Shown here one piece after another: positions 360 to 31,831 of a DNA stretch of 31,831 nt (its first letter is position 1; each line of letters begins with the position of its first letter). A model generated the notes under the pieces. The model worked only from the letters and a program-made list of their open reading frames with translations, was not told the DNA's origin and searched no databases. The position numbers and the translations under genes are program-made. The DNA lies in NCBI GenBank assembly GCA_001179505.1, contig CDMY01000676.1, forward strand, positions 1-31,831, written 5' to 3'. This stretch comes from Vitrella brassicaformis CCMP3155 (Eukaryota > Protista > Chromerida).

Positions 360-1290
360 TCGTTCGTCTGTCTGTGTCGGTCTGTCTGTCTGTCTGTCTG
401 TCTGTCGTCTGTGTCTGTTGCGATAACATGATCAAAGCTGAGTCTCTCACGCCACACACACGCCACGCATGCCTGTCTGGCTCTCACTGTCAGTCAGTCT
501 GTCTGCCTGTCACTTGAGCATCGGCAGTGTGCGGCGCGGCCGCTTCCTGACACACACACAGACACACACACAGACACACACACAGAGACATCCAGCCATC
601 CATCCATCCATTTGTGTGTGTTGTGGTGTGGTTACGAGAGTCCGTCTGCCCTCTGTCTGATGGCTGGGCTGCTGATCGACTGGCGGCCCTTCTTGTCGTT
701 CTCACTGTGCGACGACTTGTCGTCGTCCACCGCCGCACGACCACGCTTGCGCGACACTGACGGACGAGTGAGATGAGAGAGAGAAACACACACACACACG
801 TGGCGCCTGTGGTGTGTGTCTGTCTTTTGTACCTTGTTGTTGCTGCGAGTCGTTGTATTTGTGTCGCCGCACACTGAAGCCCTTGCCCATGTAGTCACGG
901 GTGCTCAGCAAACCGCTCTCCTGCAGCCTGACAGAGAATGACATGTGCGTGTGTGTGTGGGTGTGTGTGTGGGTGTGTGGCAGCGACTTACTGTTCGATT
1001 ATGCACTGTGCGATTTCCTCGTCCTGCCCGATCATCGCAGCCAAACTCACACACGTCACCTGCACACACACACACATACACAGAGAGAGAGATGGATGGC
1101 TGGACGGTGTGTCTGTGTGCTCACATAGCGGACGTCGCTGTCGAGGAGCCTCTTGGTGGCCGTCGTCAGAAGCGCCTCAGCCTCGTAATCAAGCTGAGTA
1201 CACACACACAGACAGACAGACAAGGGCATGGATGTGTGTGTATGCTGGTGTGGTGGGTGTGTGGGCGACCGATGGGTCATCGTCGTTGTT
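360..1290. repeat. Direct-repeat partner of about 30940-31831 (3' exons, introns and 3' flank of HOP1)
   Basis: Exon sequences are nearly identical between the two locations, e.g. cacttgagcatcggcagtgtgcggcgcggccg and gacgacttgtcgtcgtccaccgccgcacgaccacgcttgcgcgacactgacggac. Microsatellite introns differ in length. Confidence 0.95.
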
Positions 1291-8671: not shown

Positions 8672-10440
8672 TCACTTGTGGCCCGATCCAAACAGCCACA
8701 TGCCCAGCCCCCCCTCCAACTGGCTGGGGCCGCGTTTCACCCCCTGGCCGCCGGTGGTGGTGGTGGTCGTCGTCGTCGTCGAGGAAGCGGCAGCAGCAGC
8801 GGCAGGTCCCTCCTGGGGGGCCCCCGCGGCAGCAGCAGCAGTGGTAGTCGACGCCAGACGGGTGCCCTTGGTGGCGGCGGTGGAGTTGGTGGTGTTGGGT
8901 GTTGTGGTGATTTCGGCGGGCGTCTTGGGCGTGGCGATGGGCAGTGCCGGAGTTGGCATGACGGGGGGTGTCTTCAGGATGGCCGCGATGCACTTCGAAA
9001 CCTCGTCACTGAGCTTCTTCAGATCTGAAGGCGAAGGGGAAAGCGTGAAGGCGTGATGTGATCAGATTTTCTTTGTGCCGTCTCGTCTGCGCTGCGAGTC
9101 ACTCACTCTCGATGTCAGCCTTGTTGACGTACTGCTTCTCATCGTCTTCCTCCTTGATGACCTCCTTCACGACTTCTTTGACGATGGGCTCGCTCTCGAC
9201 GGCGTCCGTCTGCGTGTCCTTGGACTCGGCGACCGGCTTCTCCTTCTCTTGCTTGACGTTGTCGATTCGGTCGAGGGAGGGCTCGACAGGGCGCATCACG
9301 GGCGTGGTCTTGTTGGAGCGGGGCGTGGTCAAACCCGACGACAGAGAGTTGTTGTACCTATCAGTCCATCCATCCATCCATCACAGAAACAAAGCCACAT
9401 GCAGATCCAAGGCGTGTGTGTGACGGCAGGGGGGAGGGGGAGGATTCTGCCTTACGTGTCAGTGCTGCGCTCGTACTGGGGGTTCATCATCTCCATGAGT
9501 CCCTGTTGGTAGTCCACTTCTCGAATGAGCGCCTCATTCATCGCCTTCTCCGTCTCGAACGCAAACACGAGCTTGGGCACATCTGGCGAGACCAAGAGAA
9601 ACGAGTGGCACTGGCCCTCCTTGCCTGCCTGGTGAAACAAGTGGCCTACTGGGTGCGCTGGTGAAGGCCAGGCAGTATGATTGACCTGTTGAGGGAGGGG
9701 GAGGGCGGGGGGGGGGGGGGGGNNNNNNNNNNNNNNNNNNNNNNNNNNNNNNNNNNNNNNNNNNNNNNNNNNNNNNNNNNNNNNNNNNNNNNNNNNNNNN
9801 NNNNNNNNNNNNNNNNNNNNNNNNNNNNNNNNNNNNNNNNNNNNNNNNNNNNNNNNNNNNNNNNNNNNNNNNNNNNNNNNNNNNNNNNNNNNNNNNNNNN
9901 NNNNNNNNNNNNNNNNNNNNNNNNNNNNNNNNNNNNNNNNNNNNNNNNNNNNNNNNNNNNNNNNNNNNNNNNNNNNNNNNNNNNNNNNNNNNNNNNNNNN
10001 NNNNNNNNNNNNNNNNNNNNNNGGGGGGGAAGACAACGAACCAAAGCAGTGGTTGTGTGTTTGTGTGTGGGAGGGGAGGGGAGGGGGTCTGCCAGTGGCC
10101 AGTCTATCTATCTATCTAGCCCTTCCCTCCCACCTTTGAACGAGTGAAGGACCTCGACCTTGGAACTGTACGCGCGCTGCCTCATGGCATTGGGGCGCCC
10201 CTGGGCAGTCGCCGCCTGCATGTCTGGGTACGTCAGCCATCCGCCATGGAAAAGCTGCACACACTCCCTGGCCCATCTCCCCCCTTCGAAAGTACCTGAA
10301 CACCAACCCCCCCTCACACAGACAGGCTCACACAGGCGGGGGGTTGGCTGTCCGTTCATGCCCTCTCGTGTGTTACCGTCATACGAGCTGTCATAGACCA
10401 GCACGTTTCTCTTCCGCCACGCCTGGCTGTGGAATCCCAT
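8672..10440 (-). CDS. Hypothetical protein with an N-terminal PH-like domain and an acidic, Thr/Ala-rich low-complexity C-terminus; interrupted by an assembly gap
   Basis: Phase-compatible exons MGFHSQAWRKRNVLVYDSSYD / GTFEGGRWARECVQLFHGGWLTY.. /gap/ ..QCHSFLLVSPDVPKLVFAFETEKAMNEALIREV / YNNSLSS..ADIE / LKKLSDEVSKCIAAILKTPP..GHK*. W-x-R-x-x-V-x-L and F-x-F-E-(T)-E-K-x-M resemble PH beta-2 and the C-terminal helix. Start and stop positions are tentative. Confidence 0.6.
9723..10022. other. Assembly gap (300 N) flanked by poly-G runs
   Basis: Seen directly. Confidence 0.99.
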
Positions 10441-10883: not shown

Positions 10884-12380
10884 ATGGGCCGCGCAGATGA
10901 CCATCCGGACATCAACAACCAGCAGGGCTTCTACATGCCACCGCCCAGGTGAATGAGTGCAGTGCCGACACACACCTGACAGATCCATCCATCCATCCAT
11001 CCATCCGTCAGGTTCCCTCAGGCGTTCGGCCCCTTCCCTCCCCGCCCCAGGCCTTCCCGGCCTTCCCCTCCGTCAGCCCCGCCGTGCAGACGCTCCTCGA
11101 CCAGCTCCCCGTCGACGACCGACCCGACTACCTGCCCATCAGTCCCATCCTGCAGGACATCCCCCGACAGCCCCTCGTCACCATCCACGGCGACAACCAC
11201 AGCGGCTTCCAGCTGGGTCACACCTACGAGCGGCCGTGTCTGATGCAGTGGCTCAACAGCAAGGGCTTCTCGCCCATGAGCAAGCGGACGCTGACGGGGA
11301 GCCGTGTGGCGAGCAACCATGAGGTCTTGTCGCGGATTGAGGATTGGGGGCGGGAGCAGAGCAGCTGCGTCTTCGGCATGGGTGTGTGGGTGTGGGTGAA
11401 GATGGAGAGGCAGCGGGAAAGGGAGGGGGCAATGAGGGTGAGAGGGATAGCTCTGCTGCTGCGGCGGCGGCGGCGGCGGCAGGTGGTGGTGGTGGTGGTG
11501 TTGCAGCCGGCCACGGCAACAAGATTGAGATAGGTACCGTCACAAAGGGTCGGGGCTGAGGTGTCTGTGATGCATTGTGTTGTGTTGTTTGTGGGGCGGG
11601 GTCAGATTTGACTCTGTCGCCGGCGCCGAACGTCCTTCGGCCTGGTCCAGCAGCAGCTGCTGCTGCGGCTGCTGCAGCCTACAACACACCGGTACCCACA
11701 ACACATTGATATGTTGTCCTGTGGGTGGGTGTCCATTCCATTCACTGGTCCTGCCTCGGTGTGTGTGTTGCGTCTGTTGCGTCTGTCTGGCAGGTTGACG
11801 ACTCGTCTGACGACCTGTTGGCGTCGCTGCCGCAGGAGGAGGAGCTCAATGGCGAGGCCATGAATCCTCCCCCACACCATCAAGCTGCTGCTGCTGGGGT
11901 ATATCTAGATTACGTCGATTTCCATCCATTGAGTCATGATCATGTTTGCGCATCCATCGATGGCTCATGCCTGCCTGCTGTTGGACTGTCAGCGCCTGTT
12001 GGATGAGCGCCCGCTGGGTCCGGCGTGGCTTCGCCAGCTCTTCAGGCACTTCCGCCCCTTCGGGTTCAGGGGGCGACCACCGCTCTTCGTACGCAATGCA
12101 CCCACGCCAAACTCGAACGCACTGGACGCCCTCTTGTGCAACGCTGTTCTCTCTTTGGTGTGGTGTGGCATGTGTGCGTGTGTGTGAACAGCGCCCTCGT
12201 CCCGCCATCCCCCCCTGGGCGCAGCGCAGGCAGCAGACGTATGGTGAGGCCGCTGGGGCTGCCGGCGGTGATGGTGGGGGTGGTGTTGGTGTTGGTGTGG
12301 GTGCGGGCAATGGGCAGCGCAATGTGCGGCCGCGATTCATGATTGAAATTGAAGTGGAAGGGGGGCACTGTAGCGAATGG
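10884..12380 (+). CDS. U-box (RING-like E3 ubiquitin ligase domain) protein with Pro/Ala/Gly-rich linkers; two apparent single-base frameshifts (about 11045 and 11356); 3' end undefined
   Basis: U-box motif PDYLPISPILQDIPRQPLV..GHTYERPCLMQWLNSKGFSPMSKRTL..VASNHEVLSRIEDW at about 11120-11350. Exon 1 is MGRADDHPDINNQQGFYMPPP. Downstream exons DLTLSPAPNV.., VDDSSDDLL.., RLLDERPLGPAW.., RPRPAIPPW.. join with matching phases. Confidence 0.7.
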
Positions 12381-12605
12381 GTGAGTGCTTGCGTGAGTGG
12401 ATGGTTGTGTATAGCTGCCATGGTGTATATAGCTGGATGGATGGGTGGCGTCACCGGCGTGTTGTTAATCCATACCTTGCTACGTACCCACACGCCAACC
12501 ATCCGTGATTTCCCCGAACGCCCAACCACTCAGCCGACAAAAGGGCAAAAGTCAATCCCACACACCGAGGAAAGAGATGGAGAAACGGACCACACGACGC
12601 CGGGA

Positions 12606-12639
12606 GGCGAGAATTCGAATTCTCGCCGTCTCGAGACGG
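12606..12639. promoter_or_regulatory. Two overlapping perfect palindromes (22 bp GGCGAGAATTCGAATTCTCGCC; 14 bp CCGTCTCGAGACGG)
   Basis: The palindromes at 12606-12627 and 12626-12639 are seen directly. A regulatory role is only inferred from their position upstream of the Josephin-like A exons. Confidence 0.35.
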
Positions 12640-12770
12640 TTTTCAATTTTTCCGCGCCAGCTCTCCTCATTTCTCACTGTCCGCCTCGTAATTCCTTCGT
12701 TTCTTCTCATTTTTCGGCGGGAGTGGTCGGGCGCCATCGGCCCGCAGCCCCCCCGGCCCGCCGCCGGCGG

Positions 12771-13955
12771 GAGGGCGACCACATCGTCCTCACCGTCGGC
12801 GAGAGGGAGGTGCGCTACTTCTTCCAGGAGCAGCGCAAGAAGGGCGGCTTCTACGACTTCTCGTGCGGCTTCAAGGCCATGAACATGGCCATGGGGAGCC
12901 TCACGCTGCCCAATCACCTGTTCCGCAAGAAGGACCTCCAGCTGCCGTTTGAAGAGCACCTGCAAGGACCGGTAGGTAGGCAGTGAGAGAGACCACACAC
13001 TCACACACACATCCATCCATCCATCCATCTCTTGTGCTGTCTGTCTGTCAGATATCCGCTGCCGAGGCCGGAGACTACCTGAACAAGTACACAGAGCTGA
13101 CGGCCGTGGTCCTCTCCGACGTAAGTGCGACGCACACACACCACAACAAACACAGCCCATCCGTCCGCTCATTGTCTTTGGATCGATGGACGCACCAGGT
13201 GTATGGTAAGGACCTGTCGCAGAGGATTGCCCACCTGGGCGGCACGAGCTCGAGTGACGTCACAGGCGTCATCATGACCACAGAGGCGAGGCCCTTTCCC
13301 GGCGATAACCAGACGGTGGACCCATATGCAGTACATCCGGCTGCTGGGCGAGGGCCTGTGGCTCGACCAGGACTCGATTACGGAGCTGCCCGACGGCGGG
13401 AGGGGCGACAGGGTGCTGCTGACCAACGAGCGGCTGACCAACCTCATCGCCAGGGACCAACACTTCGGGTTCCTCAAGACGGGCTTCGAGGACATCGACA
13501 TGTATCAGCAGTACTCGGCCATCGCACTCGTCAGCTCGCCGGTCGCCCGACACCGAGCCATGAACCCCCCTTCCCCTCCCCCACAGGCACCCCCCCAGGC
13601 ACCCCCACAGGCACCCCCTGCCCATCCCCTTCCCCCTGCAGACGGCGACCAGGCCATGGCGGGCGGGGCGGCTGCTGCCGCCGACGAGGCCTTACAGCCG
13701 CCCTTCTTGCGCTGTAAGGGCAGCTATATTACGAGCTCTCGTGCGGGTTCAATACGAGGGACACCAGGAGACACCAGGAGACGCCAGCAACGGTGTAGTG
13801 CCATCAGTTGCCCTCTTCAAGCCGCCGCCTCAGCCGAAGGCCCCGCAAAACGGTCAGAGGCGCACGCAGGCGCCCAATGGAGTAATGGCGGGGGCCGGAG
13901 GACCTGCAGCCCCACCAGATTCAGCCATTATTGCCCAACACATCACACGGGATAA
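12771..13955 (+). pseudogene. Josephin-like (papain-fold) cysteine peptidase / putative deubiquitinase A; +1 frameshift near 13295, no clear own ATG, tail truncated relative to paralog B
   Basis: YFFQEQRKKGGFYDFSCGFKAMNMAMG (Cys 12864-12866) and WTHMQYIRLLGEGLWLDQDS (His 13323-13325, Asp 13371-13373) mirror the Josephin motifs F-HE-x-Q..C-x-x-H-x-x-N and H-W-x-x-I-R..W-x-N-L-D-S. Introns 12972-13051 and 13121-13198 are phase 0. Confidence 0.6.
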
Positions 13956-14119
13956 TAACCTGCTACACGTGAGAGAGATTATGCACAGAGACTCCCATGT
14001 GTACCAAAGCACATGACGGGATCCATCACGTCGCGCGTATCTCTGTCCGTCTCTCTGTGCAGCAGAGGCTTGGGAATCGCGAGGTCAGAGCTGACCTGAC
14101 GGCCCAGAGTGTGGGAGTC

Positions 14120-15990
14120 CACCGCCGCCAGAGTACATACGAACCACAAGGAGGACGCAAGCCTGGACAATTTTCCACTCCAAATACGGTGTGTTTGCAT
14201 GTCAGACGAAGTGTTGAGAGATCCGACCGGAATTGCGGTTCAGGGAGAATAGGGGTCGGAGCATGCCCATCACGGTAAGACCAGAAGCACTCACTGTCTG
14301 ATAGACGCCAAGTAGCCGGAGTGGTTGGTGCAGCGAGTGAGCGAAGCCATCACACACACACACACACACGCATCCCTCCCTCCCTCCCTCCCTCCCTCCT
14401 GCTTTTGTCTCTGTCTGCGCCTCGGTCAGGCTGAGGGCCTTTTGCAGAGGACACTCTCAAAAATCGCTACCTACATTTTATATCTGGACGAGCCTCTCCC
14501 AGCAAATGCATCATGTCCCACTCACTTCTCGAGACACTGCGCCAGACACCAGGCAACAATCATGGTAATTGGAGAACACACAGAGCTGACAAATACTTAC
14601 TTAGTCAATTGTGTGTTTGCATGACAGACCGAGTTGGGGGAGATCCAACCAGGGCTTCGCTTCAAAGAGAATGGGGGCCGCAGCATGCCCATCAGTATAA
14701 TTAAGACCAGAAAGACTGTTTGTGTGTGTGTGTGTGTGTGTGAGCAGTACTCTGGTGAGGTTGAAAGGCTGCGTAGTGAGCTGAGCAAGTCGGCCGAGGA
14801 GTACACCAGCGAGTTGACCAAGGTGAGTTGGAATGGTGCAGGGAGGGAGTCAGTGAAGGAATTGGTGGGTGGATGGGACGGTGGGTGCACTGATTGCTCT
14901 GGAGAGAGAGGATGGATGGATGGATTGTGTGTGTCTGTGTGTGTGTGTTGGTTCAGGTCAAGTCCAGTTTGGAGGCCGTGCAGAGTGACAAGGACCGTCA
15001 GCTGGACCAACGCCAAGCCAACGTCGACCAGATGAGTGAGTGGATCATGAGACGAGCGAGGCGGGCACACCCACAAACTAACAGACATCCATACATCCAC
15101 ACACAAATCCCTCCCTCTCTCCGGGAGACTCTCCCTAGCCAACACACACACACACGTACGCAACACACCACAGCAACTCTGTCTGTGTGTGTGTGTGTGT
15201 GTCTATGTGTGCTTTAGAGGCGCCGCCCACAGATTCGCCCTGCTTTCGAGCCCTACAGCCCGCCGCGCCACACAGAAGTGTCGATGCCCCCCCAAACACA
15301 CGCCGTCGCCCCTCCACCTACCCCTTTCCAGGTACAGCAATCCAGGTATGCATTGGACAAACACACAGCTGACGAATAAAAATATTTGTTGTGCATTTGC
15401 ATGTCAGACTGAGTTGGGGACCATCCACCCTGAGCTGCGCTTTAGGGAGAATGGGGGCTGCAGCATGCCCATCCGGGTAGTTAAGACCAGAAAGACTGTG
15501 TGATAATAGACCTCCGCTCATGCGTTGTGGCTTTTATCAATCAGGGTGCATGACTGACGTGCTGACTGACTGACGGGATGGGACGATGCTGACTGACGGT
15601 GGGTGCGTGTGTGCAGCTGTGATGACTGACGTGGTTTGCTTTTCGGACATACATGCAGGAAGGGTGCGTGCATGAGGCACATACTTCCTTGTGTTGTGCG
15701 CTTTGTCCTGGTCCTGGGCGAGAGAGGGAGGGAGAGGACTGACCGATCCGATTCATACACCACACCCTGATGACCGATTGGTGTGCGCCAGACACACAAT
15801 GCGTGGGCTTCGCTTTCATCTGTAGAATGGCTGCCTACTTTTTATATCTGAATGAGCCGTGTCTCTCTGTTGCGCGTGTCTGTCTTGATGCTGACGGTGT
15901 GTGTATGTGTGTATGCCGTGTGCAGCTGTGATGACTGACTGACGTGCTTGGCTTCTCGGACATACATGTCGGTAGGATGCAGAAGGTCCG
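14120..15990 (+). pseudogene. Patchwork of decayed, internally duplicated exons of an unidentified gene (includes coiled-coil exons at 14746-15060)
   Basis: Three copies of a 69-nt exon with flanking intron (14206-14274, 14628-14696, 15408-15476). Two copies of ATYILYLDEP / AAYFLYLNEP (about 14465 and 15830). Two copies of gtgcagctgtgatgactgac..cggacatacatg (about 15612 and 15920). Coiled-coil exons YSGEVERLRSELSKSAEEYTSELTK / VKSSLEAVQSDKDRQLDQRQ. Confidence 0.5.
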
Positions 15991-16276
15991 ATTATTCTAG
16001 TTACTAGTCAGGTGTCTGAACACTGCAACCACTGCGAGCGGTAATGCCGCCCGACCATCCCCGACTTACCGAACCCTCCTCCCTCAGCCACATCCCCCAG
16101 CCAGCCCAACGATAAGAGAGAGAAAAGGCAATTACCTTTGCACATACACACACATACACACACATATTCACAACGAGTGATAAACCCGCCAACCCGTCTG
16201 TCCGTCATGATCAACCTGTCCCTCCCCCATCCATCCATCCATCCATCCGTGAACCCATCCCTCACTGTCGGTTGAA

Positions 16277-16930
16277 TCATGCCATCATGCACAGCGGAAA
16301 CCTAGCCGCCCCACACACGGCCCCGAACGGCGGGCAGCATGAAGCCTTCCCCGGCCTGGCCCGCCGACACCGCCGCCCACACCCCCGATGCCCACACTGC
16401 GCCGGGCAGCACGCAGCTGTGCCCGACTTCTCATCCTCAGCGAATATGCCGCCCAGGTACCTCACGCACACCTCTTCTGCCTCATGTGGGGTCGGCAGTG
16501 CCTGTGTCTGGTTGCTGGCTGTTGATGTTGACGTTGATGTGATGGCGCTGTCTGGTAGTGCTGGCAGCTGCTGCGGCTCTTTGGGCTGTTTGCTTGGTGG
16601 TGGTGGGCGTGAGGCGGTCCAGTAGAGGGCCCACGACCGAGATAAACCGGTGTCTAGCTGCCGGGGACGGTAGACCTGAGATAAACCGGTGTCTAGGTAC
16701 TCGTAGTGTGAGGCCCTCACGAAGGTGGTCGTGTTCATGGTTGTGTGGTTGCCCGTGTCCAGGTGCGGGCAGGGACGAGGCGGACATGATGGATGACGGT
16801 GTCCCCGCAGCAGCAGCAGCAGCAGCAGCAGCTGCAGCAGTACCAGCTGATCACGCTGATGTCCGCATGGATGACGATGAATTGCGGGAAGAATTGATGG
16901 ATGACTGATGAGTGAGGCCGGATGGATCAA
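16277..16930. other. GC-rich coding-like segment, strand unresolved (217-aa minus ORF with Cys-rich end, or a plus-strand terminal exon GAGRDEADMMDDGVP(A)nVPADHADVRMDDDELREELMDD*)
   Basis: Both readings are visible. There is a (GCA)n tract at about 16806-16840 and a 19-bp direct repeat gagataaaccggtgtctag at about 16649 and 16678. Confidence 0.3.
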
Positions 16931-18323
16931 CAGACACTTTTTTCTGTGACACTGTATGCTTTGTGAGCCATGCGCACTCTTGGATTTTACGCAACCTCAT
17001 AGTCAGTCAGTAAAGGATCTTGTGAGCGTCATCAACCGTAACAGCAATCGACAGGGGGCGCACGGACCTCAGCACCTTGTAGGCATCGACCCTGCATAAT
17101 CACACACACGCGCAACACACACACAGAAACACACACACATTGATGGCCGTGGGTGGCGGGCGACGACACGCGACACGAGTGGACGTTGTCCATGTAAATG
17201 TTTACTTTCGCGCGGGAGGGGCGCTATGCTGCTCAGCAGAAAAGGAAGATCGGCGTGTCGGCTGTGTTTTTGAGAGCATCATGAAGGAATCTGCAATGGA
17301 GATCTCCCGAGATCTCCCGTGGGGTAGCTGCGTGGCGATGCCGGCCCGGTCTTTCTGGCGTGATTGTCAACACCGTTGGGGCCGTGGACCGTCGCAGAAC
17401 GACAGGGAGTCATCAGAACGAAGAGGCCGCACAACAACAACCATCAGCAATGGCTTGAAGCTTCAGCGGGCCACCCCACTGCGGGGAGGGGGTGGGGGTG
17501 GATGGACCGGGATGGACTTTTTGGAGGGAGGGTACCGACCCGGTCCATCGTTGATATCGATGCGATTTCGTTGGTCTCAGTGATGATTGTGGTGTCTCTC
17601 ATGTCTCGGCATCAGCGCAAAGGACGGCAGCTGGGCCCAAACAGCGAATGCCTCCGTTTCCCCCCGCTGCCCCGGTGAATCCTCGCCGCCTTCCGACCGC
17701 CTTGGCGCCTCCAGCATTCCTGTCGTCCAAGGCGGAACAAGCGCGGACAAAGGGAGCAGCCATGGGAGAGCAGAGAGGATGTAGCTATAGGGCCAGCCGT
17801 CTTTTGAGTGACTGTGTGACTTTTGCTTGCATGTCGTGCAATTTGTTGTCGTGTCTCTTTTGGAGAGTCTACGCAAAGACATACTACAGTGCAAGCATGA
17901 TGTCATGGCTTTCGAATAAATGTCTCAATCCCTCACCTCTCTCTCTCCCCCTCAAAAAACGAAGAAAACCACACGCAAAGCAAACAAGGACCCGACTACT
18001 CTCGGAAACGCTCGACGCACTCTTAAAGTTCTCACACCTCGAGCTTCAAGCAAAAGCTGCCCTTTTCTCAGCCACACACTTCACATGCGAAGCACTCACA
18101 CACTCAACACGAACTCTCATGACCAGCTGCTCTTGCTTAGCCCTTGCCTCCCTGAGGCTCTCTTTTTGCCTCACTCGGCTCGCCTGACACATGAGAGCGG
18201 CTTGGGCCACTCATTCAACGCAGAGCCTCGGTTGCTGCCTTCTTGGTCTTCGTCATTGCTCTCTTGATGCTCTTCGCAGCGGGGGGGGGCTGAGAATCAA
18301 CCACGGGAACCCACTCTGCATCC

Positions 18324-18774
18324 GGAATCACACAGTGATCATATAGAAATCGGCTCTGATTTCTATTGTGCAGCACCTGGAATCACGGAATCAGAAATCG
18401 AAATCGTTAACCCCCACTGGCGAAGTGATTTTGGTTCTGATTTGACCTCTAGGGTTTAAGAGAGCGGTTTCACGAAATAAGACCCTAAGTCCTAACCCTA
18501 AACCCCAGAGAGAAATCATTGAATCAGAATCAGAAATTGAAATCGTTAACCCCGTCTGAGAGAGGTGATTCCGGCCATCGGGTGATTCCATGATTTAGGG
18601 TCATGCACTGATTCATATCTCGACAACCAGTGATTCCAGAGAGTCAATCGGGGGCGCAAAAACACGGCCAAAGGCCACTCTTTACGTGTGCCAAACGACG
18701 TCCTCTCACTCTCAATGGTCAGCGCGCTGTGACGACAACAAGGTCTGATTTCTATGCTGTGATTTCGTGATTCC
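18324..18774. repeat. About 450-bp element with imperfect 30-bp terminal inverted repeats, GAATCA/GAAATC-rich internal repeats and telomere-like CCCTAA(A) units (MITE-like or subtelomeric remnant)
   Basis: 18324-18353 matches the reverse complement of 18745-18774 at 21/30 positions (GGAATCAC..ATAGAAATC). A 27-bp direct repeat at 18388 and 18527 has one mismatch. ccctaagtcctaaccctaaacccc lies at 18483-18506. No target-site duplication seen. Confidence 0.5.
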
Positions 18775-19214
18775 AAAAAGAGTGAGTTCCCGTGGAGAAT
18801 CAAGAGACGCGGCATTTGAAGAGAAGGGATGGCGATCGTCGTGGTACTATGCGGCCAGAACAGTTCGGGGCGCTCCAAACGCCGAACCTGACAGGTGATC
18901 TATTCCTTGACGCCGGCACAACGGCCTCTCACTTCTCTTGACTCGCTTGAAGCTCCACATCTGCGAGCTCAGCCGAAAGGGGAAGGCTGCATTTTCCCTC
19001 TGTGCACTCTTCTCTCGCTGAAGCCATCAGCAGCAGCAGCAGCTCAAGCAGCAGAGCCGCAGAGCAACAGAGCAGCAGAGCCCACTGGGAGATCCCGTCG
19101 AGAGAAACTCGCCACAGGCAAAGGTGAGCAGCACGCGGACGTGCACTGCCTCGAGGAGTCATGTGCAATTCACACGATGTATTGATTGTTGTACGCAGTT
19201 CAGGTGTTGGCGTG

Positions 19215-20989
19215 ATGACCTTGCCGCAGTCGGCTCGCCATCAGCCCCGATCCCGCCTGCCTGAGCCACAGGCACCAGCGGCCGCAGCAGCAGCAGCAGG
19301 AGGGGCGCAAGACCCACGTCAGTCTGAGGAGCCATCGTCATTCCCAGGGCTGTTCGACAAGAGCCGCCACACAGGAGCGAAGGACCACTTCTTCGAATGC
19401 GTTGGTGGTGAGGAGCGGCTGCACTTCGGCATGGGGAGGGTGTCCCTCGGCTCGACGTATTTCAGCCATCAGCCCCCGCAGCCAGGGGCGGCCATCCCCT
19501 GGTACAAGGCGGACTGTGGCAAACACGCCACCAACATCGCCATGGGGCACCAGGTCGTCGGGTTTGAGGGCGATGGCTTCGAGAGGGTCGAGAGGGCCAA
19601 GCGGAAGGCCACTGAGGACTACGAGTGGCTCGACATGGCCGACATCGCGCAGCACTTTGAGAAGCTCGAGAAGCCGTGCACCGAGTTGGGAGGGGTAAGT
19701 AAGCAGACACACGAGGGGAAGGAGTGCGACCAGTGACGTTATCTTCTTGTCTGTTTCTCTGTGTATGTGCCATGGTCTCTGCGTGTAGATTAAGGGGAAG
19801 TCGGTGGCCGAGAAGATCGAACTTCTAACGGCACACTGGGAGCGGGAGCGGGGGGCGGTGGTGGCCATGTTGCTGCGGGAGAGGGCGGTGTTCGAAGCCG
19901 GTCAGCAGGCGATGGACCACTTTGTGGCCATCAAGCCCCAGGCTGACCGGCTTTGGGCCGACTGCGATAGCATTAAGGAGCGCCAGCAGCCACACAAGCT
20001 CATGGACGCCGGGGAACTGGTCGCGAGGGTGGAGAAAGTAAGCGTGCACCACCTGTCAAACACACATGCACTCACTCGGTTCATCCCTGTGTGTGTGTGT
20101 GTGTGTGTTCCCTCCCTCCGTCCCTCCCTCCCGCCCTTCTGCTCAGGCGGACGGCAATCGGGTCATTTCCCGTGACCCCCAGGCATTCGCCCCCGTGAAG
20201 AGAGACCACGACGCGATCGTCATGAACCTCGATGACGACGATAACGCGCAACCAGCCCAGCACAAGTCTGTAGCGCACACACGCACACACACACGCAACA
20301 CACACAGACACACGAATACTCAATCACTGTGTTCACTTCTTTTGTGTTGGTCTCGGTTTCAGCCCTGGTGCAGCGGCCGCGGCTGCAGCCGTGCCGATCG
20401 CCATCGATGACGCCCCTGCCCGTCCCACTCCCCCTCCCCCTCCCCCTGCAGACGGCGACCAGGGCATGGCGAGCGAGGTGGCAGCTGCTGTCGACGAGGG
20501 AGACGACGTGCAGATGGGCGATGGAGAGGACGGTGGTGCGGGCGATGGTGCGGGCGATGGTGCAGGCGATGGTGCGGGCGATGGTGTGCGTGTGGGTGGC
20601 GCTGGCAAGGTTGAGGGGAGCGGCAAACGGAAGCGGCCGGCTGACGGTGACGACGAGGAGCCGCTCGACCAGGCCCTCCGCCGCAAGCGGCGAGTCCTGC
20701 GCGCCAACCAGGACAGCCAGGAACCCCAGGACACCCAGGACAACCACGAGGGCGGGTGAGTCAGCACACCGACACACAGACGCAGAGAGGAGGGGACGAT
20801 GGACATATCAACCTTATGTGTATGTGTGTGTGTGTGTGTGTCATGGTGGTGTGATACCTGCGATGCAGCGACGGTGCTGAACCCCCCCCTCATGTGCCGT
20901 ACTGGGAGCGGCCGATGGAGATTGACGAGAAGTACGCCACCCACAGGTACCCCTTCAGGCGGCGTGCCAACCACCGGCGGCGCCGCTGA
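19215..20989 (+). CDS. Josephin-like (papain-fold) cysteine peptidase / putative deubiquitinase B; intact reading frame, at least 5 exons (an additional upstream exon ending at 19123 is likely)
   Basis: Exons 19204-19694, 19789-20037, 20147-20265, 20363-20755 and 20869-20989 join in phase. YFSHQ..ADCGKHATNIAMG (Cys 19515-19517) and MDHFVAIKPQADRLWADCDSIK (His 19918-19920, Asp 19966-19968). The acidic Pro/Gly tail contains a KRKR and RRKRR NLS-like patch. Confidence 0.7.
20535..20582 (+). repeat. Coding minisatellite (GGTGCGGGCGAT)x4 encoding (GAGD)4
   Basis: Seen directly; one unit has GCA instead of GCG. Confidence 0.9.
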
Positions 20990-22584
20990 GCGGGTGGGGT
21001 GCCCGCCAACACCCATAAACACAACACCCACACACACACACGCACACACACACATATCAGTAGGTGGGTGGATGTAAGTGCTTAGCGTGGTCGAGTTGAA
21101 GAGAGCTGTCCGCCCGTCTGCTGTCCGTCTGTGTGCGCCGTGGCTGCGTTGACTTGTGGGCGTCAGTCACATCAAAGGGGCCGGCTGTTTTTCACTCGAC
21201 TGACCGTATCCGTTGGAGAGCAATACCGGCCTTTTTTGGCCAAGTCAGGCTTACTCCTTACTCTGACTGATGCTTTGATTGATGACACTGTCGGAGTGGC
21301 CCCGTGTGTTCATTTGTCGGTCTGTGTGCGGGAGGGCGGGCAGGCTATTTGTCTGTCTGCCTGTGGGTTAAGTGCACCTTGCTCACTTTGATGCTGTGGG
21401 AGAACAGGCTATTTGTTTGTCTGGCTGTCGATCCACAGAGAGAGAGAGAGAGAGAGAAGAGGCGTCATAACCACACAGGCAATCCATCAGAGAGAGAGGA
21501 GACCGTGTGCCGACTGTGCCACAGTACAGTCACTCACTTCTATGTGTACGAGCGAAGCTCACTCACTGTTGTCGTCTGCCGCAGTACCCAACACATCTGA
21601 ACGTGCCTGCATGGGACGCACCACGTGTCGTCAAAGGGGAAGCCAAGCAAGATCTCAATTAGTCAAGGCTCCCTTTGTGCCATGTCTCTGTGTGTGTGTG
21701 TGTGCTGGCTGTGTGGCATGGGTGGGTGGATGGATCGCGTGTGTGCTAGTGGTGTCGGTTTGTGTGCTAATGTGTCGCCTTTGTGCTGTGTTTGCTAAAG
21801 CGATGGATCCGCCCTTTGCGTGGCCCCTTGATTTGTCGGATGGCCGGTTTGCCAAGAGATAGGAAGAGGCCGTCTGTGGACTGTGTGCTGCTTTGGCTGC
21901 TTGCTTTACACACTGTGCTCTCAGGCACACTGACACAGACACGTGTGTGTGTGTGCGTGTGTGTGTGTCTGTCTGAGACGGTCTGATGTGTCTGTGTGGT
22001 CGCACATTTGGCGTGCGTGAGCATTTGTCTGGCTGCCGTGATTTGTCATGGCGTGTTGTGAGTGCACTGGGAGAGACGGAGGGAGGGAGGGAGGGCAGGA
22101 GAGACCCACACCGCACACACATTGCGTGTACCATATCATCACACGGGCGATCGTACCGCACCGCAGCTAGTCACTTAGTCGCACTCAATGATGCCGTCAC
22201 GGTGCCTGGTGCGATGCAGCGGACGGATGGCTGGCTGCCCGTCTGTGTGGATGGCTGTGTGTCTGCCACCGGAATGAATTGCCTCCCCCTTTTTCTCGGC
22301 TTCTTCTACTTAATAATTACATCGTCGTTTTACGTCTGTTTGCTGTTATGGGGTGCCCGCCATGGGTTCTTGGGTGATGGACAGACAGTGCAGAGGAAGG
22401 AACGACACAGAGAGACAAAGAAAGGCCCATAAGAAGGCCACACTTACAGCTCGAGATGGGGCACGACTAACTGCGGAAACTTCCCAACAGACAGGTCAGC
22501 ATGACACAGCACTCCTTCGTTTCGTCCACACCAGAACCACCCTCCCTCCCTCTCTGTGTTTGTGTTGTGTGTGTTGTGCTGCAG

Positions 22585-23352
22585 GTCGGTGGATTACCCG
22601 GCCTATCGGCATCGCCGATCTGTGTGTGGTCGCTCTCGTGTGCTCTGACTTCCCACCTGACGTCCATACCAGCGGTGAGTGATCGGGTAGGCCGTCCGGA
22701 GAGGGGGCGACCTGATCCATGGCAGCCACATCAGCCATGGTTCCGTGTGTGTGTGTGTCTTGTGTGTTCAGCCAGGTGTGTGCCATCGATGCTGCTGCCA
22801 AGGAAGCGACACCAACGAAATGCTTTCCTTGACCCCCACCGCACCCAGCCACCTCCAAGCCAACCGGTGAGTGAGCGGAGATCAGATGCACTGGTGGTGG
22901 ACGGGATGGATGGATGGATGGATCATCTCCTGCTGGCTGCATGTGTGTGGGTCGATCAGGTGTGGCAGCGTCATCTGTCTCCAGCGGATCGTCATTCTCA
23001 ACTCGGGGCGGCATGTCTGGCGGTGCGACCTTCGGGCAGCAACGACCCGGCAGCGCCGCACAGAGCAGCCCCTCCCCCATCCACACGGCAGCCCTTCACC
23101 AGCAGACACACATCGCCATCGACTGCAGCACCCATGCCGACCGTCACTTCTGGAAGAGCCTGACGCCTGAGGAGGCCTTCCATCTCGGCAGGCGACTCAT
23201 TAACCTCACGGCCCTCACCCTCGTGCAGCCACACAGCGACCGGTTGTGGTGTCTGAACACCATGATATACGTCGTGGAGGGCCATGCAGCCGGGCGGCCG
23301 GGCGGCGGGAGGCGTGTGAGAAGGAGGGGCAGCAACACACGGCTGAGGGCCG
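22585..23352 (+). pseudogene. Fragment of a probable lineage-expanded gene family (QQTHIAIDCST..FWKSLTPEEAFHLGRRLINLTALTLVQP..WCLNTMIYVVEGHAAGR), frameshifted by an 8-bp duplication and 3'-truncated
   Basis: The GC3-rich coding-like exon at about 22970-23352 has a tandem CCGGGCGG at 23290-23305. Removing one copy restores AAGRREACEKEGQQHTAEG. The family assignment is from recollection of Vitrella-type expanded proteins, not a search. Confidence 0.45.
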
Positions 23353-25653: not shown

Positions 25654-27816
25654 GTTGTGTGTGTGTGTGTCAGGTTGTGTGAGAAGCTGACCCGTTTGAA
25701 GCATGGGTGGGTCGACGAGATCAAGATCTTCGACGCCGTGCAGCCCATCCCCTTCTACCACGACATATTCTTCGCCAACTCGCCGATCGCCATCGACAGA
25801 CCGCATAAGGACAGCGAGAGCCAACCGGCATTCCGCAGCTTCATTGCCATGATGGGCGCCTTCATCAAGTCGTCCATAGAGGGAGGCAGGGGAGGGGCGG
25901 AGGTGCTGAGTGTGACTGTGGACGGCCGCACAGTGGCGACCACCGATGCCACACTGGCCGACTTCGACACACTCAACGACCGATTCACCAAGTGAGAAGA
26001 CAGGCACACACAGGGTGAAATGGGGAAGCTGTGAAATGATTGACTTGCCTTCTCCTCTGTGTCACGTGTGCAGGTATGGCGCCACTCCCATCGTCGATGT
26101 GTCTGCAAACCACGTCGACCTGTGAGCACCCAGACAACCACCAGAGGCAGCAATAGACCGCATCTATTCGTCTGTTGGTTTGTTCAGGATCGTCGACTTC
26201 GCTCGTCGGTGTCGCCTGGCCCCCGAAGGCGCCGTCGTCCCGCCGCCCTCGTGTACGGACCAGGATGAGCTGGTGCGTGTGAGTGAGATGTACGGCGTCC
26301 TGGAGGCCATGTACCCCAACATCCTCGCCAACGACGTCATGCAGACCCTCCTCATCATGATCGGCAAGAAACAACCTAACACAACCTGCCTCTGCAAGTG
26401 AGAAACGGCAAGGAGAGGCCATAGCGCCACGTTCTATTCATCTGTGTGTCATGTGTGTGTGTGTCAGGAGTTCGCTGCACGGTTCGTCGTATGCTAGTCT
26501 GGCGCAGCGAGTGATGGGCCGCCGCGGCCTCCTCTTCGTCATCAAGTACGACGACACCAACACCATCGCAGTCTTCGCCGACACCAGGCTGCACATCCAG
26601 CCGACCCCACATCTCAGCTGCTGTTCTGCTGCCCCGTGTCGCTGTTTTCGGTGTGCGGTGCATTCGGGGAGGGCATCACCAAGATCGACGTGCCGCAGAA
26701 CGGGCAGTGTGTGGCGGTGGCGGGCACAGAGGGGGCGGCAACGGACAAGGACGGTGAGCCATTCGGCGAGGTAGCCATCGCTGGCGGCCGCCTGTGGCTG
26801 GGGTGTGGCAATCGCGGCCCGACTGACGACATTCTCCGCTGCCAGCAGTGGGTGTGCAAGAAGGAGCAGCCGGCCAACAGGAAATTTGTGGGCAAGACCA
26901 TCAACAGCAAGGCCGCGAGCCTCTGTGGTGTTGAGACCTACAACTTCGCCGCCCGGCGTGTGGAGGTCTTCCAGGTCCGTCAGCCAGGCATCAACCAGAG
27001 AGCACACAAGTGGGTGTGGACATCATGACCCCTTTCTCTCTGTGCAGGTGTGGAGTGCTGTGCCGGCCGACCCCATCCTGACTGAGTCTGACCTGCGAAC
27101 ACTCGTCGACCTGACCGGCATGACGGATGCGACCCCACAACTTCTCTAAAAGTGAGCAACCGATGACAGGCAGGCTGCTCGTGATTCGTTGATGATATCG
27201 TTTTGCTGCTTTCGTGTGTGTGTTTGTCAGGGCTGAGCGTGACGGCTGGGAGTCCGAGGCCATGTTCAAGAATGTGGGCGACGCCACCGACCTCCTGCTG
27301 CTCCTCACAGACCTCACAGACCCCAGCGGCCCCATCATCGCCTCGCACATCGAGGGCGGACTCACCCCGCCCGCCGACCCCACTGCAGTGGCGACGACCC
27401 CCTGTGCTGTGTCGCTGTTTTCGGTGTGCGGTGCGTTTGGGGATGATGGCATCATCAAGGTCGAGGTGCCAAGGACAAGCAGGACGTGTGGGTGGCGGGC
27501 ACACAAAGGGACGGTGACGGACAAGGACGGTGAGCCAGGCGGCAAGGTGCCATCGCCAAGGGCCGCCTATGGCTGGGGTTTGGCAATCGCCGCCCGACAG
27601 GCGACCTTCGCAGCTGCCAGGTGTGGGTGTGGAAGGAGGAGCTGCCGGACGACAAGAAGTACGTCGGGACCATCAACAACAATGGCACAGCCATCTTGGG
27701 GTCCGGCATCACCTTCACGGCTGCCGATTTGGAGATCTACACACTGCAGGTCAGAAAGACGGGAAAGTGGGAAAGAAGGACATACACACACCATGAACGG
27801 TACGTCCTTTTCTCCC

Positions 27817-30722: not shown

Positions 30723-31070
30723 TGATCAACTGGATGATCAAGATGGCTCATTTAGTTGTTGGATGATCAATTCACGTAGATGAATGAAATGGACAGAGAA
30801 AGATGGATGGATGGATGGATGGATGAGAAATGGATGGAAGGTACACTTGTACAGTACTTTCGTGTGTGTAGAGGTAGGTTCGTGTCTGTCGTTCACACAC
30901 GTCATGACATTGATTCCATGGATCAACACGCTTCATCGCCACTCGTCTGTCTGTCTGTATGTATGTCTGTTGCGATAGCATCATCAAAATTGTCTCTCAC
31001 GCCACGCACACGCCACGCACATCATGACTGTCTGCCTGCCTCTCAGTCTGTCAGTCTGTGTGTGCGCCGG

Positions 31071-31831
31071 TCACTTGAGCATCGGCAGTGTGCGGCGCGG
31101 CCGTTTCCTGACACACACAGACACACACACACAGAGACATCCATCCATCCATCGATCCATTTGTGTGTGTTGTGGTGTGGTTACGAGAGTCCGTCTGCCC
31201 TCTGTCTGATGGCCGGGCTGCTGATCGACTGGCGCCCCTTCTTGTTGTCGTTCTCACTGTGCGACGACTTGTCGTCGTCCACCGCCGCACGACCACGCTT
31301 GCGCGACACTGACGGACCAGTGAGATGGCATCAGACGAGAGAAACACACACATTTGGTGTGCCTGTGTCTGTGTGTCTGTCTCTTGTACCTTGTTGTTGC
31401 TGCGAGTTGTTGTGTGTGTGTCGCCGCACACTGCAGCCCTTGCCCATGTAGTCACGGGTACTCAGCAGTCCGCTCTCCTGCGGCCTGACAGAGAATGACA
31501 TGTGTGTCTGTGTGTGTGTGTGTGTGTGGCAGCGACTTACTGTTCGGTTATGCACTGTGCGATTTCCTCGTCCTGCCCGATCATCGCAGCCAAACTCACA
31601 CACGTCACCTGCACACACACACACACACACAGATGGATGGCTGGACGGTGTGTCTGTGTGCTCACATAGCGGATGTCGCTGTCGAGGAGCCTCTTGGTGG
31701 CCGTCGTCAGAAGCGCCTCAGCCTCGTTGTCAAGCTGACCAGACAGACAGACAGACAGACAGACAAGGGCATGGATGTGTGTGTATGCTGGTGTGGTGGG
31801 TGTGTGGGCGACCGATGGGTCATCGTCGTTG
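31071..31831 (-). CDS. HOP1: Meiotic HORMA-domain protein (Hop1-like), copy 2; only the 3' exons are in the window
   Basis: Near-identical to copy-1 exons: LDNEAEALLTTATKRLLDSDIRY / VTCVSLAAMIGQDEEIAQCITEQ / PQESGLLSTRDYMGKGCSVRR / SRKRGRAAVDDDKSSHSENDNKKGRQSISSPAIRQ / RPRRTLPMLK*, with the stop at 31071-31073. Confidence 0.85.

What the first reader, a model, noticed from the sequence alone, without database searches (positions are those of the whole stretch)
12771..20989. Two highly divergent Josephin-like deubiquitinase genes forming an apparently lineage-specific family
Seen: two genes 6.5 kb apart share a Cys motif (SCGFKAMNMAMG vs DCGKHATNIAMG) preceded by an F/Y-F-x-x-Q. Both have a His followed exactly 16 residues later by Asp in W-x-D-x-D-S (THMQYIRLLGEGLWLDQDS vs DHFVAIKPQADRLWADCDS). 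Established: Josephin DUBs (ataxin-3, JOSD1/2) use a Gln oxyanion residue, C-x-x-H-x-x-N and H-W-x-x-(I/V)-R..W/Y-x-N-L-(D/N)-S with about 15 residues from His to Asp/Asn. Inference: these are atypical Josephin-fold proteases with an enlarged Gln-to-Cys loop (11 and 15 residues versus about 5 in ataxin-3) and no UIMs. They may form an uncharacterised expanded DUB/ULP clade with altered substrate or linkage specificity. Outside the motifs the two share little similarity, implying old or fast divergence.
Basis: partly seen in the sequence, partly recalled or inferred. Interest (0 to 1): 0.8.

Follow-up and report, generated by a model that had tools for sequence, protein, structure and literature searches.

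The report
Orphan protease-like genes in Vitrella
The alga Vitrella brassicaformis has one intact gene and several decaying copies of a family found nowhere else; its conserved Cys, His and Asp look like a ubiquitin-removing protease, but no test run here could confirm that.

Summary
They are more alike than chance (BLASTP E 4e-4 and 3e-4; shuffle p about 0.001 each), colinear, and share a phase-0 intron position, so A and B are old paralogues.

They are not two equivalent genes:
- **Gene B** (19215-20756, four exons, 414 codons) is intact, has strong coding composition, and is probably transcribed (indirect evidence).
- **Gene A** looks like a decaying copy. It has a real +1 frameshift one base before its His codon, confirmed by contigs of two DNA runs. 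It has no start codon or coding signal upstream, and no RNA contig.
- Two more decayed copies lie on other Vitrella scaffolds.

**Josephin membership is not shown.** Pfam, NCBIfam, and PDB sequence and profile searches found no Josephin or any other peptidase family. The only trace was a sub-threshold C39-like hit (E 0.12). Two AlphaFold runs failed (pLDDT 38 and 42). The Gln five residues before the Cys is missing.

Motif spacing fits a papain-like Cys-His-Asp isopeptidase. Gene B has Cys to His 103 and His to Asp 16; human Josephin-2 has 101 and 15.

An exhaustive search of 1.84 billion representative proteins found only Vitrella copies.

First readers of this scan noted similar "Josephin-like" domains on other pieces of this genome. 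None has been followed up.

The parts
12768..12971 (+). Gene A, Cys-motif exon (frame 0). Cys codon at 12864-12866. Coding composition begins abruptly at 12768, with no in-frame ATG or coding signal upstream.
   Evidence: (GC3 0.93 against GC2 0.31). 90% nt identity to L001:10551-10720 from 12761 onwards.
13052..13120 (+). Gene A, small exon 2 (frame 2), between introns of 80 nt and 78 nt with GT..AG ends.
   Evidence: Sequence read. GC3 0.83.
13199..13321 (+). Gene A, exon 3, first part (frame 2). It aligns end to end with the start of gene B exon 2. The intron position before it is shared with B.
   Evidence: p about 0.06; coding signal in frame 2.
13322..13322 (+). Site of the +1 frameshift in gene A (one extra base in GAC-C-CAT), one base before the His codon.
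   Evidence: Frames. Coding signal switches from frame 2 to frame 0 here. DNA contigs of X3 (13037-13832) and X5 (13037-13558) match with 0 differences and 0 gaps.
13323..13550 (+). Gene A, exon 3, second part (frame 0). His at 13323-13325. LWLDQDS with Asp at 13371-13373. The coding signal ends at about 13550.
13614..13689 (+). 76-nt stretch in gene A's tail, 86% identical to 20424-20499 in gene B's tail.
19215..19694 (+). Gene B, exon 1 (160 codons from the ATG). Low-complexity N-terminus, then the Cys motif with Cys codon at 19515-19517.
   Evidence: Donor GT at 19695. The junction ELGG|IKGK is the same as in database protein P0001. GC3 0.88.
19789..20037 (+). Gene B, exon 2 (83 codons). 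His at 19918-19920. LWADCDS with Asp at 19966-19968.
20147..20265 (+). Gene B, exon 3 (ends in phase 2).
   Evidence: Its junction with exon 2 matches P0001.
20363..20759 (+). Gene B, exon 4. Pro-rich then acidic Gly/Asp-repeat tail with basic KRKR and RRKRR patches. TGA at 20757-20759, overlapping a consensus donor GTGAGT at 20756-20761.
   Evidence: (no Pfam domain).
20869..20946 (+). Possible further exon of gene B, used only if the donor at 20756 is spliced instead of reading the stop. Coding-like composition.
   Evidence: GC3 0.9. Not verified by RNA.

Best explanation
This is a small gene family restricted to Vitrella. Its core of about 200 residues most likely forms a papain-like (clan CA) cysteine isopeptidase.

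Inferred mechanism (nothing here was tested biochemically):
- A nucleophilic Cys sits at the start of a helix (C-G-x-x-A-x-N-x-A-M-G).
- About 100 residues later, a His lies on a beta-strand (H-x-x-x-I-K/R).
- An Asp on the return strand of the hairpin, 16 residues after the His (L-W-x-D-x-D-S), orients that His.
- The enzyme would cut after the C-terminal Gly of ubiquitin or a ubiquitin-like protein. Josephin (C86) and UCH (C12) are the nearest look-alikes by motif.

Status of the copies:
- Gene B (four exons, 414 codons) is the only intact copy seen. It is probably transcribed and is apparently missing from the public Vitrella protein set. Its acidic tail with basic patches suggests a nuclear or cytosolic protein.
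- Gene A is an old tandem paralogue that is decaying: a verified frameshift next to its His codon, no start codon, no RNA contig.
- Two other scaffolds carry broken copies. One of them was recently gene-converted by B.

Shown here: the paralogy, the state of each copy, the past purifying selection, and the lack of detectable relatives.
Inferred: the fold, the catalytic role of Cys/His/Asp, and the substrate.
For: - **Paralogy and motif conservation at about 30% identity.**, plus the shared phase-0 intron position.
- **Spacing in gene B.** Cys101 to His204 is 103 residues and His to Asp is 16. Human Josephin-2 has Cys24, His125 and Asp140, that is 101 and 15 (PMC7337049).
- **Coding composition.** GC3 is 0.8-0.93 against GC2 0.3-0.48 in all domain exons, like the RNA-verified U-box exon.
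- **Purifying selection in the copies' history.** dN/dS is 0.2-0.4, and 29 of 54 differences fall at third codon positions.
- **Gene B is intact.** It is open over four exons with GT..AG introns of 94-109 nt.
- **Gene B is probably transcribed.** RNA-like runs X1 and X2 hold 8-9% of the sampled words of 12500-21000. None of these lies in 12500-16799. B is the only gene-like region in 16800-21000, apart from one small coding-like patch at about 16795-16908.
- **Weak papain-type hints.** Sub-threshold Pfam hit of the A Cys exon to a C39-like peptidase family (E 0.12). A helix starts exactly at the Cys in the second, low-confidence AF2 model.
Against: - No peptidase family reaches significance. 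This holds for Pfam, NCBIfam, and PDB sequence or profile searches.
- Both AlphaFold2 models and the ESM Atlas model are unusable: pLDDT 38, 42 and 0.37. Clustering of Cys, His and Asp in space is therefore untested.
- No Gln or Asn sits at the usual oxyanion position 5-6 residues before the Cys.
- Three of the four copies seen are broken, which fits a family that is being lost.
- Transcription of B is inferred by subtraction, not seen directly.
Confidence: 0.5

Rival explanations
1. One reading: these are true, very divergent members of the Josephin (MJD, peptidase C86) family, with an enlarged loop before the catalytic Cys.
For: - Gene B has C-G-K-H-A-T-N, against the Josephin signature C-x-x-H-A/C-x-N-N (signature recalled from memory).
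- H-F-V-A-I-K ... L-W-x-D-x-D-S resembles H-W-F-x-I/V-R ... W/Y-x-N-L-D/N-S (also from memory).
- Cys to His is 103 and His to Asp is 16, against 101 and 15 in Josephin-2.
- The order of predicted helix-like and strand-like segments can be threaded on the Josephin topology by eye.
Against: - Pfam Josephin does not match any piece or P0001, even at E up to 10.
- No Josephin or ataxin-3 chain appears in eight PDB sequence and profile searches.
- The Gln five residues before the Cys is absent.
- Gene A lacks the His of C-x-x-H.
- The His-hairpin motif fits UCH (H-F-I/V-A-L/F ... L-Y-E-L-D, from memory) about as well. The His-to-Asp spacing of 15-16 is common to many clan CA enzymes.
Confidence: 0.25
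2. An orphan, fast-evolving protein family that is not a protease. The conserved Cys, His and Asp would be structural or metal-binding, or a short conserved interaction motif. The resemblance to deubiquitinases would then be coincidence.
For: - No family, structure or fold support of any kind.
- No relatives outside Vitrella.
- Most copies are decaying.
- No oxyanion Gln.
Against: - Exactly the residues expected of a papain-type triad are invariant between paralogues that are otherwise about 30% identical. They lie in the canonical order and spacing, with small residues after the Cys.
- dN/dS well below 1 shows a constrained protein.
Confidence: 0.3
3. The domain is cargo of, or derived from, a mobile element. 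That would explain the scattered, chimeric and broken copies.
For: - Copies on at least three scaffolds are fragmentary.
- L001 joins an A-type Cys exon to a B-type copy.
- An unchecked first-reader note reports a hAT-like transposase next to a 'Josephin' domain elsewhere in this genome (s1-212128).
Against: - No transposase or other mobile-element domain was found in ten ORFs of 110 aa or more scanned between 14600 and 24300.
- L001 and L002 lie among ordinary genes: superoxide dismutase, a light-harvesting protein, DnaJ, Band 7.
- The copies keep their introns.
- Copy boundaries do not coincide, and no terminal repeats were seen.
Confidence: 0.1

Closest known systems
Josephin / Machado-Joseph deubiquitinases (peptidase family C86; ataxin-3, JOSD1, JOSD2)
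   Same: - Order Cys, His, Asp.
- Cys-to-His and His-to-Asp spacing: 103 and 16 in gene B, against 101 and 15 in Josephin-2 (PMC7337049).
- C-x-x-H-A-x-N after the Cys in gene B.
- Aromatic-x-D/N-x-D-S after the His hairpin.
- Asp rather than Asn as the third residue, as in Josephin-2.
   Different: - No Pfam or PDB sequence match.
- No Gln five residues before the Cys.
- Gene A lacks the His of C-x-x-H.
- The hairpin is one residue longer.
- No UIMs.
- A long Pro-rich and acidic tail.
- Fold untested.
Ubiquitin C-terminal hydrolases (peptidase family C12)
   Same: C-G directly at the nucleophile. H-F-V/I-A-I/L followed 11-12 residues later by L-aromatic and an Asp (motif recalled from memory).
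   Different: - Cys-to-His distance is about 71-78 in UCH enzymes (from memory), against 103 here.
- No Gln six residues before the Cys.
- No Pfam Peptidase_C12 match.
C39-like papain-fold peptidases (Pfam DUF3335, Peptidase_C39-like)
   Same: The only family that gave any signal. The gene A Cys exon matches the N-terminal Cys motif of the model (E 0.12, 12.3 bits). The C-G-x-x-A motif and His-to-Asp spacing of 16 also fit.
   Different: - The score is far below the curated cut-off (25 bits).
- Gene B gives no hit.
- Cys-to-His distance in C39 enzymes is about 80 (from memory).
- C39 enzymes are bacterial leader-peptide proteases.

Membership tests
Josephin (Pfam PF02099, MEROPS C86) | Significant match to the family profile | tested here: not met
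hmmscan against Pfam-A at E up to 10 gave no Josephin hit. Scanned: exon pieces of A and B, short motif blocks, and the 386-aa paralogue P0001.
Josephin (Pfam PF02099, MEROPS C86) | Sequence similarity to solved Josephin domains (ataxin-3, JOSD2) | tested here: not met
   Eight phmmer or profile searches of all PDB chain sequences at E up to 10 returned no Josephin chain.
Josephin (Pfam PF02099, MEROPS C86) | Oxyanion-hole Gln about five residues before the catalytic Cys | tested here: not met
   Position -5 is Trp in B and Phe in A. The nearest Gln is 12-15 residues before the Cys in B and 11-13 in A, and it is not in an invariant column.
Josephin (Pfam PF02099, MEROPS C86) | Cys, His, Asp/Asn triad in this order, with about 101-105 residues Cys to His and 15 His to Asp/Asn | tested here: met
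   Gene B: Cys101, His204, Asp220, giving 103 and 16. Gene A: about 100 and 16 if read across its frameshift. Josephin-2: 24, 125, 140. The His-to-Asp spacing is not specific to Josephin.
Josephin (Pfam PF02099, MEROPS C86) | Josephin fold with the triad clustered in space | tested here: inconclusive
   AlphaFold2 on P0001:160-350 with family rows gave mean pLDDT 38.3 and 41.9. The ESM Atlas model has pLDDT 0.37. No fold search was run on such models.
Josephin (Pfam PF02099, MEROPS C86) | Deubiquitinase activity | not testable with these tools
   Needs recombinant protein and ubiquitin probes.
UCH (Pfam PF01088, MEROPS C12) | Significant match to the family profile | tested here: not met
   No Peptidase_C12 hit.
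Peptidase C39-like (Pfam PF11814 DUF3335) | Match above the curated cut-off (25 bits) | tested here: not met
   12.3 bits, E 0.12, for the gene A Cys exon only.
Clan CA papain-like cysteine peptidases (general) | Invariant Cys followed by a small residue, then His, then Asp/Asn 15-17 residues after the His on a hairpin | tested here: met
   Invariant columns between A-type and B-type sequences:
- Cys block: C, G, A, N, A, M, G.
- His block: H, I, L, W, D, D, S.
This is motif-level evidence only.

The most novel reading that the evidence does not exclude
Gene B founds a new chromerid-specific family of clan CA deubiquitinase or UBL-protease. It is so diverged that no profile recognises it. Its oxyanion-hole residue has moved and it carries a nuclear-type acidic tail. 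In this reading it is caught in a birth-and-death process of duplication, gene conversion and decay.
Probability: 0.3. Interest if true: 0.6.

Novelty: new variant of a known kind. Interest (0 to 1): 0.35.

Why it matters
Chromerids are the free-living photosynthetic relatives of apicomplexan parasites, and new deubiquitinase families are still being found mainly through structure.

If gene B proves to be an active isopeptidase, it would show two things. First, lineage-restricted enzymes of the ubiquitin system can escape all profile searches. Second, it would give a small, expressible test case for how a papain-type active site works without the usual oxyanion Gln.

As it stands, the practical result is more modest:
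- One intact and apparently unannotated gene.
- A corrected picture of its neighbour, gene A, as a likely pseudogene.
- No RNA support for a fusion of the upstream U-box gene to gene A.

Tried and rejected
**Family and structure searches**
- Pfam on exon pieces, short motif blocks and P0001: no peptidase family. NCBIfam: nothing.
- PDB sequence searches with single exons, P0001, and profiles of B-type rows, the A+B Cys block, the A+B His block and a combined alignment: only chance hits with E above 0.1.
- AlphaFold2 twice on P0001:160-350, with 4-row and 5-row alignments: pLDDT 38 and 42, unusable. No fold search was run on these models.
- ESM Atlas by features, for B exon 1 and for P0001:165-345: no usable hit.

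**Homologue searches**
- Word-index searches with the B exon-1 ORF, with P0001 and with the A Cys exon: only P0001.
- Exhaustive phmmer with B exon 1: P0001 and P0003 only. The other four hits are low-complexity or RCC1-type repeat proteins.
- Scans with the motif blocks: the His block on metagenome, prokaryote-genome and viral contigs, and the Cys block on metagenome contigs. No confirmed relative.

**Alignments**
- MAFFT misplaced gene A's weakly similar exon fragments (alignments A1 and A6), and in A6 also gene B's exon 3. Those alignments were not used.

**Ideas rejected**
- U-box plus protease fusion. RNA contigs of X1 cover the U-box gene's exons and stop at 12414, with no joint into gene A. 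Their loose ends do not map in the window.
- Rescue of gene A by a 73-nt cryptic intron (13259-13331). It is possible on paper, but it would delete the His and has no RNA support.
- A 'third copy' at about 23100-23290 (D-C-S-T-H-A ... P-H-S-D-R-L-W). tblastn gives nothing there, so it is taken as chance.
- Mobile-element linkage in this window. No such domain was found.

**Literature**
- No paper joins Vitrella with Josephin. Papers on Vitrella and deubiquitinases are unrelated to this family.

Full report
**Setting**

The window is eukaryotic. It has short GT..AG introns, GT/CA microsatellites and about 58% G+C. Earlier notes of this scan name the genome as Vitrella brassicaformis. This fits: the only database relatives come from V. 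brassicaformis CCMP3155, assembly GCA_001179505.1, and they match the window at 84-97% nucleotide identity.

**The observation**

Both Cys motifs and both His...Asp motifs are at the stated places.

| Residue | Gene A | Gene B |
|---|---|---|
| Cys codon | 12864-12866 | 19515-19517 |
| His codon | 13323-13325 | 19918-19920 |
| Asp codon (His+16) | 13371-13373 | 19966-19968 |

The two blocks are more alike than chance:
- Cys block: BLASTP E 4e-4 and shuffle p about 0.001.
- His block: E 0.007 and 3e-4 and shuffle p 0.0015.
- The stretch between the preceding intron and the His aligns end to end with one 2-residue gap, p about 0.06.
- Both genes have a phase-0 intron two codons before a conserved G-K.

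Columns invariant between A-type and B-type sequences are G, Y, C, G, A, N, A, M, G in the Cys block and H, I, L, W, D, D, S, I, E in the His block. A and B are therefore old paralogues that kept a Cys...His...Asp arrangement.

**Gene models**

*Gene B* reads cleanly as four exons (19215-19694, 19789-20037, 20147-20265, 20363-20756) followed by TGA. That gives 414 codons with canonical introns of 94, 109 and 97 nt. The first two junctions are the same as in database protein P0001. Third-position G+C is 0.77-0.88 in the three domain exons, against 0.36-0.42 at second positions. This resembles the RNA-verified U-box exon nearby. The stop codon overlaps a consensus GTGAGT donor, and a coding-like exon at 20869-20946 could follow. 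The 3' end is therefore open.

*Gene A* has a Cys exon (12768-12971), a 23-codon exon (13052-13120) and a third exon from 13199.
- In the third exon, the B-homologous reading frame changes from frame 2 to frame 0 at about 13322, one base before the His codon.
- The coding composition switches frame at the same place.
- Contigs of two DNA runs from different studies cover the site without any difference or gap, so the frameshift is real DNA.
- Coding composition starts abruptly at 12768, with no in-frame ATG and no coding signal upstream.

**RNA evidence (contigs only)**

Run X1 covers the upstream U-box gene. Three introns are removed (11691-11792, 11898-11991, 12089-12191), and coverage stops at 12414.
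- No X1 or X2 contig lies on 12415-15100.
- No joint leads into gene A.
- The loose ends of the U-box contigs do not map anywhere in the window.

Gene A is thus unsupported by RNA, and a U-box-protease fusion (note s1-248720) is not supported.

X1 and X2 nevertheless hold 8-9% of the sampled words of 12500-21000. None of these is in 12500-16799, so they must lie in 16800-21000. The only gene-like region there is gene B, apart from one small coding-like patch at about 16795-16908. This is indirect evidence that B is transcribed.

**Other copies**

The exhaustive phmmer search with B exon 1 against 1.84 billion representatives found two real hits, both from Vitrella.
- **P0001** (386 aa, locus L001) joins an A-type Cys exon (90% nt identity) to a B-type copy. 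The B-type part has two compensating frameshifts and a roughly 300-nt insertion inside exon 2.
- **P0003** (103 aa, locus L002) is a B-type fragment. It has an in-frame stop just before the Cys motif, and it ends before the LW-x-D-x-D-S motif.

L001 is 97-100% identical to B over 19439-19906, intron included, but only 84-87% beyond. That points to recent gene conversion.

Differences between copies favour third codon positions (29 of 54), with dN/dS 0.2-0.4. So the family was under purifying selection for much of its history.

Neither A nor B appears among public predicted proteins of compatible length.

**Is it a Josephin?**

Every tool test was negative or inconclusive.
- Pfam gave no Josephin, UCH or other peptidase hit for any exon piece, motif block or P0001. 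The only trace is a sub-threshold C39-like hit for the gene A Cys exon (E 0.12).
- NCBIfam gave nothing.
- Eight PDB sequence and profile searches returned no Josephin chain.
- AlphaFold2 on the only joined family protein available (P0001:160-350, itself defective) gave pLDDT 38 and 42. The ESM Atlas model of P0001 is equally poor.
The most informative fold and profile test therefore remains undone.

What remains is motif-level resemblance.
- Gene B has C-G-K-H-A-T-N. Its His hairpin is H-F-V-A-I-K ... L-W-A-D-C-D-S.
- Cys to His is 103 and His to Asp is 16, against 101 and 15 in Josephin-2 (Cys24, His125, Asp140; PMC7337049).

Against membership:
- The Gln five residues before the Cys is missing in both genes.
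- Gene A lacks the His of C-x-x-H.
- From memory, the His hairpin fits UCH enzymes about as well, and the His-to-Asp spacing is general to papain-like enzymes.

My reading is a clan CA-type Cys-His-Asp isopeptidase of unresolved family (confidence 0.5). Josephin proper is a narrower possibility (0.25). A non-catalytic orphan protein is the main rival (0.3).

**Lineage restriction**

Nothing outside Vitrella was found by any of these:
- the exhaustive search;
- three word-index searches;
- two metagenome scans;
- a scan of 185,579 prokaryotic genomes;
- a viral scan.

The exhaustive search used only B exon 1. The His exon and the A-type sequences were not searched exhaustively.

First readers of this scan flagged further 'Josephin-like' domains on other pieces of this genome (s1-221743, s1-227087, s1-212128). 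I could not reach those sequences. One note links such a domain to a hAT-like transposase. In this window, ten ORFs of 110 aa or more between 14600 and 24300 show no Pfam domain.

**Verdict**

There is one intact, probably expressed, unannotated gene, plus a decaying neighbour and broken copies elsewhere. The protease-like triad is unproven and the Josephin label is unsupported by any test run here.

Noticed in passing
window 10884-12414 (+): A separate U-box gene (Pfam U-box, E 3e-5). It is transcribed and spliced in run X1: introns 11691-11792, 11898-11991 and 12089-12191 are removed. RNA contigs end at 12414, with no link to gene A.
   Followed up: partly
window 13614-13689 and 20424-20499: A 76-nt stretch is 86% identical between the tails of genes A and B: a C-rich tract, then CTGCAG, then ACGGCGACCAGG(C/G)CATGGCG. 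The domains themselves share no DNA similarity. Gene conversion or a shared element; unexplained.
   Followed up: no
L001:10480-12020 (CDMY01000887.1): A chimeric, decayed locus. An A-type Cys exon sits 80 nt before a B-type copy. The copy is a mosaic, 97-100% identical to gene B (intron included) in one part and 84-87% in the rest, which suggests recent ectopic gene conversion.
   Followed up: partly
window 20756-20946: Gene B's stop codon (TGA, 20757-20759) overlaps a consensus donor GTGAGT. Splicing to the acceptor at 20868 would add a coding-like exon (20869-20946). The 3' end of B is unresolved.
   Followed up: no
window 392-1288 and 30945-31831: A direct repeat of about 900 nt, 88.6% identical, at the two ends of the window, 30.5 kb apart.
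   Followed up: no
window 26636-26910 and 27409-27682: A tandem duplicated coding-like segment (79.6% nt identity). The ORFs on both copies share a similar peptide.
   Followed up: no
window 14187-14300, 14549-14722, 15328-15502: Three copies of a 110-180-nt repeat (75-82% identity) in the A-B intergenic region. Contigs of all runs break at 15142-15162 and 15897-15915, so a dispersed repeat lies there.
   Followed up: no
window 16795-16908 (+): An isolated patch with strong coding composition (GC3 0.93). It encodes an Ala-run and an acidic peptide, in the style of gene B's tail. It is not assigned to any gene.
   Followed up: no
window about 9700-10010: A run of N (assembly gap) inside the window.
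   Followed up: no
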